Shown here one piece after another: positions 28,401 to 31,400 of a stretch of 64,000 nucleotides of DNA; position 1 is the first letter of the stretch; every line of letters begins with the position of its first letter. The notes below the pieces were generated by a model. That model was not told the origin of the DNA. It saw only the letters and a list, made by a program, of their open reading frames with translations, and did no database searches. The stretch lies in the NCBI RefSeq assembly GCF_002571385.2, contig NW_019218150.1, positions 49,151-113,150 of the forward strand, read 5' to 3'. A program made the position numbers and the translations under genes. The DNA comes from Stylophora pistillata (taxonomy: Eukaryota).

Positions 28401-31400
28401 TATAGCACTCCTGATTAGTAGTGTACTTACGTGTGACCTGCAAAACAAAATGAAATTAGAACAAGACTTATGATATAACGATGCGTAAAACAATTTTCAC
28501 GATCATGACTACATCTTCGATTATCTCTCTCTTCTTCAGTTAAACTTTCATTTACGATGAAATTTTCTGACGACAAATTGACGCTAACCATTATCGACTT
28601 CTTCGGTTTTGTTTTCTTGCTGTGTGGTTTCGCCGATTCTTGTTGTAGTTTCTTTTTCTTCAACAGTTGTTTGTCCGTCTTTGGTAACAGTCACTGTCTC
28701 TTTCTCTGTAACAGTTGTCTCTCCCTGCGTTTGCGTTCTTTCTGTTACTGTTACTGATGTGAAGCTGTTACTGGTGCTGAAAGCTGCTGAGGCAGGTGAT
28801 AGGAAAGGAGACGACGCCGGGGGGACACCCCCTTCCGAACCTTGTATACCGGCAGCATGCATTGCTTTGACTCGGGCTAACAATCCACCCCCTCCACCGC
28901 CGCTGCTCTTCTTATCATCGGATCCCCGACTTCCGAGAATCCGGCTCAAAAAGTTCGTGCTTCGGATCGCGGTGATGGCTCGCCTCCATTTCCTTCGCGC
29001 GGTGAATGCTTTAAGACGATCGGTTTTCAGTTTCTTCCCTTTGTCCTTCTTGATGGTGAACCAGCGATGTTTAAGTAATTGATCGACCGTACTCCTTTTG
29101 TTTGCTTTAAGCACAAGAAGACCACTGATGAAGTCTTTCGCTTCATCTGAGATATCATCAAAGACAGGATCGTCAAAGTCCCACTCCGCCAGTTGGACAT
29201 TCGTCAGGGTCTCTGCATCAGTATCCCCCATAAAAGGCGATAAACCACTCAGCAGAATATATGCTATGACTCCAATAGACCATAAGTCCGTGGCAGGTGT
29301 AATTCGCTCGTATGTAATGACTTCTGGGGCGACAAATTCTGGTGTTCCAAACATTACCTTGAGGTTTTCCTTCGGGTTGTACTTCCTCGCCAGGCCGAAG
29401 TCAATAAGCTTGATTTGTTTACTTTCCGGTCTAATAAGCATGATGTTTTCGGGTTTGAGATCTAAATGGAGAACCTCTCGCTGATGCAAGTGCTGAACAC
29501 CTTCCAATATCTGTTTCATGTAATGCGACACTTCTATCTCCGAGATGAACTCATCTTCTACCACCTTCTCAAACAGCTCTCCACCCGTGACGAGATCCAT
29601 GACAAGTATCATCTCCGTGGGTGTCTGGAAGAAATCTTGAAGCCGAAGAAGCCGCCTGTGCCGAACAGAACTCATGATCTCTGCTTCGTGTATGACGTCT
29701 TGTCTGTCCTTGGGCGCAGTACATTTGATGAACTTGGCTGCATAGGCGCGGCCAGTTTTATTGTCAATGCACTTGCACACAACACCAAAGCGACCTTTGC
29801 CGAGCTCATCTTGAACAGTGTAGTACTTCGTAATCTTTTCCTCTTTTGGAGTCATTGTTCTCTCCTCAGCTTCAGAGCCAGACGGTTCAGAGAGTTCGGA
29901 GTCGCTCGCGGTTTCATCGTCCGTTGAACCCGTGTCGATTAGCAATCGTGCGCTACTCGATACTTTACCGTGAGGATTCTTGGCTACTACCGTGTATTCG
30001 CCTGCGTCGGCTGCAGTTCCCTTAGTGATGATAAGTTTACAGTTGTCGTTGTCATCGTATAGGAATGTGAGCTGTTTACTTTCCTTCAGTAGCTTCCCGT
30101 CTTTATACCATTCCACTTCCGGTTCAGGGTTACCGCTAACCTTGCATTCAAATCTGGCGGCGCTGTTCTCTATGATCTCGCAATTCGTCAGGTGTTGAAT
30201 GAAGACAGGGGGACCTAGTGGCATGCCATCTAAATGGGAAATAAGATGAATGATTAACAATGGATACGTGTTACGCAAGGGTACGAATGGCGGAAAGTAC
30301 TGATTGGGCTTTAGGTAACAAACATGTGATAGTTGTACGTGGTGAAAACGGAACCACAAGGGCCTGTAGGAGAATAGCCACAAGAAGCTTAGCATAAGTG
30401 AGTGCAGAAATAGTCCATTTTAAAGGAAGGAAAGGGTGGAATGGAAGTTAAATTCACCAGAACAAATCCACAAAAATTCCATCTTAGACGAATTAGAAGA
30501 AAAAAAAGGAGTTAAATTCTCCTCCCCTCACGGGTGCAAAGTAAAACATTCAAGTAATGGGAAGTAAAGAAGTGATCAACGCAGAAAAACAAGTAAACCA
30601 TTTCTAAACAACTTTCCTTTCAAAGAAATAAGATCAGTTAAGGATTTTAATGCTGATGCGTGGGCCGCAAGGACGAGTTTTATCGGCCTTGACCAGCTCA
30701 AGAAAGACAACAACTGCAACTCCAGTTTCGTCTGTACAGTGACTAACGAATGTTGAAGTCAAGATCGATAATATTCATTTCAGCGCGATAGAAGAAAGAA
30801 TAATAATTTTTTATATCAGTCAAGGATCAAAAGTTTACCCTACGTGTATCGCGTGGGTGTTCAGGTCACGTAGGAATCAAGGAAAGTTGAGGAAGTAAAG
30901 TCAAATAGGATTTCATTGCAGCCACAGCTGCATTAACAAAAGGAATGAGAAGGAAACCGCAGGCAGAGTTACCGACATTCAACAAAAAGTTTTTCTATTA
31001 TCTTTCTCATCACGAGCACAATACGAAAGAATAAAACAAAACCTACGAAAAAATTGTGCTGAGATGCACCACCAAGTTCTCAACACTAAATGAAGATAAA
31101 TATTAAGAGGAACAGTTGGGAGAATAGAGAAAAAATCTGAAAGCGGACTGGTCAGTTTACAGCGCTCAAAGATATTTGACGTGACAAAATCTGACATGTG
31201 TTTATAAAAACACCACATGCTGCAATGGAATAATCAACTACTAAATCAATGAAATTTCAAAAAATATTAAGAAACATCTATATTCTAAAAGAAAAAAAGT
31301 GCACTCTTTTTGAAAGTATTCAGGAATTATCATACTGAACAAGAAGAAGAATATCTTTTATGCGAGTAACAGAAAGCAGAACAGAAATCTTGAAAAAGAC

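What the first reader, a model, noticed from the sequence alone, without database searches (positions are those of the whole stretch)
28584..30229. Intronless Ig+MLCK module inside an intron-dense gene: probable domesticated retrocopy
Seen: 1646 nt of uninterrupted Ig-linker-kinase-regulatory tail, whereas the homologous Ig-kinase 1 unit is split over 12 exons (40346-34469) and cassettes B and C over 9 each. All catalytic motifs and an MLCK-type CaM site (ARRKWRRAITAIR, compare ARRRWARTANALR in kinase 1) are intact despite substantial divergence, which suggests purifying selection. Inference: a spliced mRNA from this gene or an MLCK paralog was reverse-transcribed and inserted in sense orientation. 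It then became a terminal exon, giving a protein with two CaM-regulated MLCK-like domains, or a nested gene starting at MPLGPPVF.
Basis: partly seen in the sequence, partly recalled or inferred. Interest (0 to 1): 0.75.

Follow-up and report, generated by a model that had tools for sequence, protein, structure and literature searches.

The report
Intronless kinase exon inside giant gene
A 1.6-kb coral exon that encodes a whole immunoglobulin-plus-kinase module is an ordinary, strongly conserved internal exon of a giant muscle-type gene that lost its old introns long ago, not a recently inserted retrocopy or a terminal exon.

Summary
On the minus strand, 28587-30229 is one uninterrupted exon encoding an I-set Ig domain, a linker, an MLCK-type kinase and a smMLCK-like regulatory tail. 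All catalytic motifs are present, and dN/dS is 0.03-0.04 against two other corals.

Most of the interpretation does not hold. RNA contigs from 4 of 4 runs join the kinase-1 tail exon (donor 34469) in frame to this exon. All 4 then carry it on into the first exon of kinase B (25437). The exon is therefore internal, with phase 1 at both ends, and the "stop" TAG lies in the next intron.

Six intron positions with identical phases are shared by kinase 1, B, C and two unlinked paralogs, so the intronless state is a derived loss. The module is the conserved kinase-A of cnidarian "connectitin". It is 63% identical to the only kinase-A of a two-kinase relative, against about 51% for kinase 1. It is uninterrupted in genomic contigs of many other species, and no parent copy exists in this genome. 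Ancient loss in place fits better than a retrocopy insertion.

A minor alternative 5' exon (32523 to about 32918), conserved in another coral, partly supports a nested isoform.

The three-kinase architecture is already published (PMC12198301).

The parts
28587..30229 (-). Single internal coding exon (1643 nt, phase 1 at both ends). It encodes an I-set Ig domain, an acidic linker, an MLCK-type kinase, a smMLCK-like autoinhibitory/CaM-type segment, a Gly-rich LLARVKAMHAAG motif and a T/E-rich tail. It corresponds to 'kinase-A2' of anthozoan connectitin.
   Evidence: In 4 of 4 runs the exon contig spans exactly 28587-30229.
30230..34468 (-). Intron (4239 nt, GT..AG) between the kinase-1 tail exon and the module.
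   Evidence: Joint 30229<->34469 (CT..AC on the + strand) in 4 of 4 runs, at contig depths 315/182/97/88.
34469..34812 (-). Last exon of the kinase-1 unit (regulatory tail ...RALSRMGSLGG...GGFLKKVKEE...). Its donor at 34469 is phase 1. The 5' end is approximate.
   Evidence: It is conserved at 79% in L013.
32523..32918 (-). Minor alternative upstream exon, probably a first exon. Its donor is CAG|GTTTGT at 32523. An in-frame ATG at 32592-32590 gives the leader MNHSILLARRFSSTRNSIKSTLT-D-G-MPLG... The 5' end is not defined.
   Evidence: Joint 30229<->32523 in X1 (depth 48.6) and X10 (8.8), a loose end in X4, none in X3. X4 contig 32523-32918 has no other intron cover around it. Sequence. The ATG, the leader peptide and the donor are conserved in L013.
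25438..28586 (-). Intron after the module. It begins GTTAGC, so an in-frame TAG (28586-28584) follows the exon at once. Its first ~190 nt are conserved in L013.
   Evidence: Loose ends at 28587 in 4 of 4 runs read on into the exon at 25437. A whole-intron read-through contig is present in 3 of 4 runs at about 20% of exon depth. The donor is conserved in L013. Conservation reaches 28398.
25305..25437 (-). First exon of the kinase-B unit (linker ...GKTGGLGGAANTPQ...FWGIKHEIAK), the splice partner of the module.
   Evidence: (ctgtag|GTAAGACGGGCGG...), matching the loose-end letters.
35059..40346 (-). Kinase-1 unit ('kinase-A1'): an Ig exon at 40346-40068, a linker, then kinase exons starting at 39168, 38577, 37049, 36764, 36572, 36316, ~35814 and ~35130.
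21298..25161 (-). Remaining exons of the kinase-B unit, ending in a true stop (..FNEDPYGSPDSDEE*) at about 21300-21298.
   Evidence: The C-terminal motif matches the C-terminus of L015.
8949..12546 (-). Unit C: a second complete copy of the kinase-B terminal unit, with its own stop (~8950) and an AATAAA. Whether it is an alternative 3' end or a separate gene was not tested.

Best explanation
The stretch is a constitutive internal exon of a giant Ig-repeat/SH3/PH/multi-kinase gene of a coral. This is the obscurin/UNC-89-like gene that Hanashima et al. 2025 call cnidarian connectitin.

Shown: the main transcript runs ...Ig - kinase 1 (A1) - [this exon: Ig + kinase A2 + regulatory tail] - kinase B - stop.

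Inferred from sequence: the exon encodes a complete Ca2+/calmodulin-type MLCK-like module. Its kinase would be held off by a smMLCK-like pseudosubstrate/CaM-binding tail.

Inferred by parsimony over five intron-bearing relatives: the intronless state is derived. The ancestral kinase of this family carried at least six introns, at module codons 144 (phase 2), 212 (phase 2), 258|259 (phase 0), 300 (phase 1), 325 (phase 2) and ~376 (phase 2). This unit lost all of them while keeping its two flanking phase-1 introns.

Most likely the loss happened in place. The mechanism (en-bloc recombination with a reverse-transcribed spliced transcript of the same gene, or stepwise deletion) is not shown. The loss predates the radiation of the hexacoral-like species whose genomes hold the same single exon.

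This module is the slowly evolving, canonical kinase-A of the gene. Kinase 1 is the divergent extra copy.

A minor, conserved alternative 5' exon in the upstream intron probably gives a shorter Ig-A2-B isoform. The weak GTT donor, followed at once by TAG, may give a B-less product when the next intron is retained.
For: - Splicing: the joints 34469->30229 and 28587->25437 are seen in 4 of 4 runs. One 6049-nt contig (X4) carries the upstream kinase-1 exons, this exon and the start of the next exon.
- The B unit ends in a stop at the position of the C-terminus of a relative's transcript.
- Module identity: Pfam; nearest solved structures are MYLK4 8.9e-90, twitchin 1.9e-85 and DAPK1 ~1e-79; the tail aligns with smMLCK.
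- Derived loss: identical intron positions and phases in K1, B and C and in unlinked paralogs on C244 and C134.
- Age and constraint: single uninterrupted ORFs at 92-66% identity, on genomic contigs of up to 2 Mb (P0007, P0009-P0012, P0014; the P0136 cluster up to 4.35 Mb). A second group at 50-52% identity sits on contigs of up to 1.59 Mb.
- L013 keeps the K1-tail exon, a 4.6-kb intron and the exon. dN/dS is 0.03-0.04.
- Canonical status: the only kinase-A of L015 is 63% identical to this module against 43-64% (about 51%) for the K1 exons, and has the same tail FTARRKWKK.ITAVRSTNFL.
- Tree: the module, its orthologs, group 2 and L015/eukprot form a clade (SH-aLRT 90). None of the 4 K1 exon rows falls inside it.
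- No parent: the next best hit in the genome is 39% identical, and K1 is 54%, no closer than bilaterian MLCKs at 50-55%.
- Published architecture: three kinases in coral and sea anemone, two in jellyfish and hydra (PMC12198301, section 13 read).
Against: - Loss in place and insertion of a cDNA more than half a billion years ago therefore cannot be told apart directly.
- The K1 rows in the tree are single exons of 43-66 residues, with weak or no support, and the tree is a 'quick' search.
- The taxa of the 50-52% group and of L015 are unknown.
- The runs are only guessed to be RNA by the index. Spliced GT-AG joints show that they are.
- Contig depths are crude, so the figures of about 20% read-through and 7-15% alternative-exon use are rough.
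- The 5' end of the alternative exon is not mapped, so 'first exon' is inferred.
- Spectrin and RhoGEF domains, which help define connectitin, were not found on this contig.
Confidence: 0.62

Rival explanations
1. One reading: a spliced mRNA of this gene or of an MLCK paralog was reverse-transcribed, inserted in sense orientation into an intron, and then exonised (a domesticated retrocopy).
For: At least six ancient introns are absent at once, which is what a cDNA origin predicts. A GIY-YIG-like ORF in a nearby intron hints that retroelements have been active here, but the match is weak: 20.5 bits, below the cut-off.
Against: - No parent exists. The best other hit in the genome is 39% identical, and K1 is 54%, no closer than bilaterian MLCKs.
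- The module, not K1, is the ortholog of the single kinase-A of a two-kinase relative.
- Both ends coincide with phase-1 module boundaries and are spliced in frame on both sides. A random cDNA insertion would have to create that situation anew.
- There is no A-run after the exon.
- The state is shared by many genomes, so any such event is too old to leave hallmarks.
Confidence: 0.13
2. The module is mainly an independent nested gene with its own promoter in the 4.2-kb upstream intron. The joint to kinase 1 would then be read-through splicing.
For: - The alternative exon 32523-~32918 joins to 30229.
- Its ATG leader and donor are conserved in another coral with mostly synonymous or conservative changes.
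- A Met two residues into the exon is conserved in orthologs (MPLGPP, MPEGPP, MAQSAP).
- Exon contig depth is higher than the K1->A joint depth in X1 and X10.
Against: - The K1->A joint has 6-10 times the contig depth of the alternative joint in X1 and X10 (X4 shows only a loose end and a low-depth contig), and X3 shows no alternative joint.
- A single X4 contig carries K1, A and the start of B.
- The phases are in frame.
- Contig depths cannot rank isoforms reliably.
Confidence: 0.12
3. The module's lineage never had these introns. Kinase 1, B, C and the two paralogs then either gained them or form a separate intron-rich clade, and an intron-poor MLCK gene was fused into the locus.
For: Several more distant CaMK-type paralogs in this genome have about 200-residue uninterrupted kinase exons (L002, L003, L006, L008). 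K1 is not resolved as sister of the module.
Against: Six identical positions and phases in five units, including the very divergent kinase-B type (about 35% identity), argue for ancestral introns. The module's clade is not resolved outside those intron-bearing members in the tree. Parallel gain at six identical sites is very unlikely.
Confidence: 0.08

Closest known systems
Cnidarian 'connectitin' (Hanashima et al. 2025, J Mol Evol, PMC12198301; sections 13, 14 and 20 read as passages or sections)
   Same: Many Ig domains, a central SH3/PH region, and three C-terminal kinases (A1, A2, B) reported for coral and sea anemone against two in jellyfish and hydra. Here K1, the module and B are joined in one transcript.
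   Different: The paper's main text does not mention introns: 0 occurrences of 'intron', and 'exon' appears only for human connectin. Its supplements were not seen. Not described there, and new here at the level of detail: the single-exon state of A2, the alternative 5' exon, and a fourth kinase unit (C). The N-terminal SEC14/spectrin part and the RhoGEF domain were not found on this contig.
Vertebrate smooth-muscle MLCK (MYLK) and MYLK4
   Same: The kinase is 50-55% identical. The best solved-structure match is MYLK4. The regulatory tail ARRKW..A.R is of the smMLCK type. An Ig domain lies next to the kinase.
   Different: There is no Fn3 before the kinase and no telokin Ig after it. The module is embedded in a giant multi-kinase protein. 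CaM binding and the substrate are untested.
Obscurin / UNC-89 / SPEG tandem-kinase genes with internal promoters (kinase-only isoforms; review PMC12812942, passages read)
   Same: A giant Ig gene with SH3/PH and tandem C-terminal kinases. There is evidence for a shorter isoform that starts just before the kinases.
   Different: Obscurin PK1 is only 35-39% identical and forms its own clade. There are three or four kinases rather than two, and no Ig-Fn3 between A2 and B.
Reverse-transcriptase-mediated (cDNA recombination) intron loss. This is a textbook model named from recall; no paper was read for it.
   Same: Precise, simultaneous absence of adjacent introns, with the flanking introns kept.
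   Different: The mechanism is not shown here, and stepwise deletion is not excluded.

Membership tests
MLCK-type (CaMK group) protein kinase | Complete protein kinase domain with catalytic motifs | tested here: met
   Pkinase 1-263/263, E 1.2e-74. GKGRFG, AAKF, HLDLKPEN, DFG and APE are present.
MLCK-type (CaMK group) protein kinase | Closest relatives are MLCK/twitchin/titin-type kinases | tested here: met
   MYLK4 8.9e-90 and twitchin 1.9e-85. 50-55% identity to bilaterian MLCKs.
MLCK-type (CaMK group) protein kinase | Autoinhibitory / calmodulin-binding segment after the kinase; CaM-dependent activity | not testable with these tools
   Sequence similarity only: DRLKAFTARRKWRRAITAIR against human [20 protein letters not shown].
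Cnidarian connectitin (PMC12198301) | Three C-terminal kinase domains (A1, A2, B) in corals and sea anemones | tested here: met
   K1->A->B joints. B ends in a stop.
Cnidarian connectitin (PMC12198301) | Numerous Ig domains plus central RhoGEF, PH and SH3 | tested here: inconclusive
   Ig: many. PH PF22697: 32.5 bits, over the cut-off. SH3_1: 22.6 bits against a cut-off of 22.9. RhoGEF: no hit on contig C366 among 67 scored candidates. An N gap lies at 48475-48632.
Cnidarian connectitin (PMC12198301) | N-terminal SEC14 domain and more than 10 spectrin repeats | tested here: inconclusive
   None of the 85 spectrin matches lies on C366. The gene runs off the window, and only the best candidates are scored. 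SEC14 was not searched.
Processed retrocopy / retrogene | Lacks the introns of its parent | tested here: met
   All six shared ancient introns are absent.
Processed retrocopy / retrogene | An identifiable parent gene closer to it than its orthologs in other taxa are | tested here: not met
   Best in the genome: 39% (C27); K1 54%. Orthologs elsewhere are 66-92% identical, and the L015 kinase-A is 63%.
Processed retrocopy / retrogene | Poly(A) remnant, target-site duplication, ends unrelated to exon boundaries | tested here: not met
   There is no A-run after the exon. Both ends are phase-1 module boundaries spliced in frame. An event this old need not keep such marks.
Obscurin/UNC-89/SPEG PK1 | Groups with obscurin PK1 kinases | tested here: not met
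   35-39% identity. Obscurin/SPEG PK1 forms a separate starred clade.

The most novel reading that the evidence does not exclude
The single-exon Ig-kinase-A2 unit may be the hub of a conserved three-way isoform switch in anthozoan connectitin. The first product is the giant protein carrying A1-A2-B. The second is a short Ig-A2-B kinase made from a conserved internal promoter and first exon (leader MN..LLARR.SSTR..IKS..T). The third is a B-less product made when the conserved weak GTT donor is not used, so that the conserved TAG stops translation at once. If so, nested kinase-only isoforms of the obscurin/SPEG/MLCK-telokin kind predate bilaterians. The en-bloc intron loss could then have been fixed because it freed this unit from co-transcriptional splicing constraints.
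Probability: 0.25. Interest if true: 0.5.

Novelty: new member of a known kind. Interest (0 to 1): 0.3.

Why it matters
The report corrects a tempting misreading. An intronless domain module inside an intron-rich gene need not be a retrocopy, and here RNA joints and shared intron phases settle its status. It adds exon-level detail to the recently described cnidarian connectitin: which of the two kinase-A domains is the conserved one, that this domain lost at least six ancient introns, and that a conserved alternative 5' exon may give a kinase-only isoform. It also gives a clean natural case for testing models of concerted intron loss once medusozoan and octocoral loci are compared. It does not reveal a new kind of system.

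Tried and rejected
- Nematostella 'SPEG-like isoform X3' (P0150) and Dendronephthya 'MLCK-like' (P0291) were considered as orthologous gene models. They turned out to be a different gene with coiled coil, kinase, Ig-Ig and a second kinase. Its coral counterparts are the C134 and C244 paralogs.
- I looked for annotated giant proteins that hold the module at high identity. None was among the 150 best representatives: only P0136 and P0017 exceed 60%, and both are short ORF calls. A second homolog search through P0136 (550-1750 aa) found no transcript-derived K1+A or A+B protein.
- I tried to name the taxa of the 50-52% group and of the 66-78% orthologs. The clusters carry no organism names.
- I tested whether K1 is closer to the C134 paralog than to the module. 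It is not: 53% against 54%.
- The loose end at 34466 in X1, X3 and X10, and the 'goes back' joint in X4, were rejected as artefacts. The first is an 18-nt chance match of the intron contig. The second is a paralogous K1/A match with 7 mismatches in 44.
- The second homolog search surfaced several proteins that I used as references: Trichoplax P0290, EukProt P0292 and Owenia P0295 went into the tree, and Dendronephthya P0291 into.
- The search of earlier findings gave two notes nearby (a satellite with a kinase-exon copy at 16497-17148, and an intron gain in an Ig domain beyond the window). Neither changed my reading.
- Paper searches: 'connectitin' gave 2 papers. 'myosin light chain kinase' + 'intron loss' + 'retro' gave 0 papers. 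'obscurin' + 'cnidarian' + 'kinase' gave 28 papers, 15 listed, of which 2 were read in part. I found no printed statement on the exon structure of cnidarian kinase-A2. Supplements (for example Fig. S8 of PMC12198301) were closed and could bear on the A1/A2 phylogeny.
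Full report
**What is there.** The window is G000:C366:49151-113150 of a 397.6-Mb assembly in 5513 contigs. Sequencing runs that hold the stretch are labelled with one coded organism, and neighbouring runs are labelled 'coral metagenome'.

On the minus strand an ORF of 603 aa runs from 30395 to 28584. It holds an I-set Ig domain (E 1.8e-24) and a full protein kinase domain (E 1.2e-74). 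The DNA shows a good acceptor, ttgttaatcattcatcttatttcccatttag|AT GGC ATG CCA, so the exon starts at 30229 in phase 1. At the other end the sequence reads GAT AAT G|GT TAG CGT.

The nearest solved structures are MYLK4 (8.9e-90), twitchin (1.9e-85), DAPK1 (about 1e-79) and titin kinase (5e-67). The motifs GKGRFG, AAKF, HLDLKPEN, DFG and APE are all present. The segment after the kinase, DRLKAFTARRKWRRAITAIRSTNFLSRIL, aligns with the smMLCK regulatory sequence [27 protein letters not shown].

**The surrounding gene.** Upstream on the same strand lie many Ig exons and an SH3-like piece (22.6 bits against a cut-off of 22.9). A RhoGEF-type PH piece follows (PF22697, 32.5 bits), then two Ig exons and kinase 1.

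Kinase 1 is split into at least 11 recognisable segments between 40346 and 34469, among them a 27-nt microexon. Downstream lie two further kinase units, B and C. They resemble each other and are only about 35% identical to the module.

The gene continues upstream of the window with open frames of 1484 aa and 733 aa of Ig repeats. One window exon holds three Ig domains. Large multi-domain exons are therefore not unique to this module.

No Pfam RhoGEF or spectrin match was found on contig C366. Only the best candidates are scored, and an N gap lies at 48475-48632, which I left as it is.

**Transcripts.** Eighteen of the 24 listed runs, from 7 studies, hold the exon. None is on record as RNA, and 14 are guessed to be RNA. 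I laid 28560-34559 on four of them from four studies. They behave as RNA.
- In 4 of 4 runs a contig covers exactly 28587-30229.
- In 4 of 4 runs a joint skips 30230-34468 with GT..AG ends on the gene strand (contig depths 315, 182, 97, 88). This links the kinase-1 tail exon in frame to the module.
- In 4 of 4 runs the letters that follow 28587 are not the genome's. They are the start of the exon at 25437 (ctgtag|GTAAGACGGGCGGTCTTGG...), which encodes ...GKTGGLGGAANTPQ...FWGIKHEIAK and leads into the glycine loop of kinase B.
- One 6049-nt contig (X4) holds upstream kinase-1 exons, the tail exon, the module and the first 27 nt of the next exon.

The module is therefore an internal exon in phase 1 at both ends, and the TAG at 28586-28584 is intronic.

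The B unit ends with a real stop (...FNEDPYGSPDSDEE*). This is at the position where the transcript of a relative (L015) also ends. Unit C is a second complete copy of that terminal unit, with its own stop and an AATAAA. I could not test whether C is an alternative 3' end.

**Minor transcript forms.** In 3 of 4 runs a contig reads through the whole downstream intron at about a fifth of the exon's contig depth (160.8/685, 39.6/182, 29/135). The upstream intron is at 6-8%. Such molecules would stop right after ...DNG. The donor G|GTTAGCGTC and the stop are identical in another coral, and all coral ORF calls end in NG or TG.

A second joint links 32523 to 30229. It is seen in X1 at depth 48.6 and in X10 at 8.8, as a loose end in X4, and not in X3. 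X4 has a contig at 32523-32918 with almost no other intron cover. That exon ends in CAG|GTTTGT and holds an ATG at 32592 in frame with the module.

In L013 the ATG, the 23-residue leader (MNHSILLARRFSSTRNSIKSTLT against MNYQRLLARRLSSTRKDIKSKFT) and the donor are conserved. Several of the codon changes are synonymous, while most of the intron does not align. No joint into this exon from upstream was reported. I read it as a probable alternative first exon, which is inferred and not shown. Contig depths are crude and cannot rank isoforms.

**Is the intronless state derived?** I mapped the intron positions of kinase 1, B and C onto the residues of the module, exon by exon.

All three units share:
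- an intron in codon 144 (phase 2, just before the glycine loop);
- codon 212 (phase 2);
- between 258 and 259 (phase 0, HLDLK|PEN);
- codon 300 (phase 1);
- codon 325 (phase 2).

Kinase 1 and B also share one in codon ~376 (phase 2); I did not map this position in C. Two unlinked paralogs on contigs C244 and C134 have the same positions and phases at all the boundaries I checked: 6 of 6 in C244 and 5 of 5 in C134. Because even the very divergent kinase-B type shares them, these introns are old, and the module has lost them all.

**Is it a retrocopy?** Four results argue against an inserted retrocopy of kinase 1 or of a paralog.
1. There is no parent. The best non-self match in the genome is 39% identical. 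Kinase 1 is 54% identical over its four largest kinase exons (110/203). That is no closer than bilaterian MLCKs are to either: 50-55%.
2. L015 is a metatranscriptome contig with one 1781-aa ORF of the form PH - Ig - Ig - Fn3 - Ig - kinase A - Ig - Fn3 - kinase B. Its only kinase-A is 63% identical to the module but 43-64% (about 51%) to the kinase-1 exons. It also carries the same tail, FTARRKWKKTITAVRSTNFLTRLL. In a quick ML tree each exon of K1, B and C was its own row. The module and nine orthologs form a starred clade (99). That clade joins the 50-52% group and L015/EukProt at SH-aLRT 90. None of the 4 kinase-1 exon rows falls inside, although their placement is unsupported.
3. The exon ends are module boundaries in phase 1, like the Ig exon of kinase 1 (40346, phase 1) and the gene's other Ig exons, and both are spliced in frame. 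Loss of internal introns in place leaves exactly this arrangement. A random cDNA insertion would have to recreate it.
4. The state is old and widespread. Single uninterrupted ORFs of the whole module occur at 92-66% identity, several on contigs of 0.7-2 Mb (the P0136 cluster up to 4.35 Mb). A second group at 50-52% identity is on contigs of up to 1.59 Mb. L013, a 7.5-kb genomic contig of another coral, keeps the tail exon, a 4.6-kb intron and the exon. dN/dS is 0.044 and 0.033.

But nothing specifically supports it beyond the intron loss itself.

**Comparison with what is known.** Hanashima et al. 2025 (PMC12198301; sections 13 and 14 and a passage of 20 read) describe cnidarian 'connectitin'. 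They report many Ig domains, RhoGEF/PH/SH3, and two C-terminal kinases in jellyfish and hydra but three (A1, A2, B) in coral and sea anemone. Their tree places kinase-A with bilaterian connectin, MYLK and obscurin.

Kinase 1, the module and B fit A1, A2 and B. The 'protein with two MLCK-like domains' is therefore already in print at the level of domain architecture. The main text of that paper never mentions introns, and I could not see its supplements.

Internal promoters that give kinase-only isoforms are known for obscurin (review PMC12812942, passages read). For SPEG and MYLK/telokin I name them from recall.

**Verdict.** The feature is real, functional and strongly constrained, but ordinary in kind. 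It is an internal exon of a known giant gene family that underwent an ancient concerted loss of introns. The retrocopy and terminal-exon readings are not supported. The nested-isoform idea survives in modified form as a minor, conserved alternative 5' exon.

Noticed in passing
window 8949-12546 (-): Unit C is a second complete copy of the kinase-B terminal unit. It has the same intron positions as B, its own C-terminal motif (VVASCVLRSFDEDVYESPEEEE...), a stop and an AATAAA. That makes a fourth kinase unit, where the published coral architecture has three. It could be an alternative 3' end or a separate gene.
   Followed up: partly
window 28398-28586 (-), esp. about 28437-28443: The first ~190 nt of the intron after the module are conserved with another coral (L013). 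They include a microexon-like element, ttttg.ttt..ag|GTCACAC|gtaagta. This element is not included in the main transcripts.
   Followed up: partly
window 35276-35671 and 34092/35316: A tandem array of 44-nt units (about 9 units; 7 overlapping 132-nt copies reported) lies in an intron of kinase 1. One low-depth X4 contig (depth 5.2) joins 34092 to 35316, skipping the last two exons of the kinase-1 unit. It could be cryptic splicing, a deletion allele or an artefact.
   Followed up: partly
window 37516-38025 (+): An ORF of 169 aa, antisense to the gene and inside a kinase-1 intron, has a weak GIY-YIG match (20.5 bits, below the cut-off of 22.6). The flanks are repeated: the peptide MSTTTRSIQ..HSRHKHHKRPKK appears on both strands. 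It looks like a mobile-element remnant. The Penelope-like reading is from recall only.
   Followed up: partly
window 36546-36572 (-): A 27-nt microexon, (W)SVGVIAYV(L), lies in kinase 1. It is created by an extra intron in the Trp-316 codon that B and C lack.
   Followed up: partly
My profile search gave only a very weak match there (16514-16476, E 16).
   Followed up: no
L015 (metatranscriptome contig Ga0314714_10000265): A 6.3-kb transcript contig of an unnamed relative encodes PH - Ig - Ig - Fn3 - Ig - kinase A - Ig - Fn3 - kinase B in one ORF. This is an obscurin-like two-kinase layout. The Ig-Fn3 between A and B is absent in the coral.
   Followed up: partly
window 1431-4492 (-): ORF pieces of another gene lie downstream of unit C (for example [25 protein letters not shown]). 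The one piece tested (2864-3019) had no Pfam hit. A glycosyltransferase/PIG-A-like reading is recall only.
   Followed up: no
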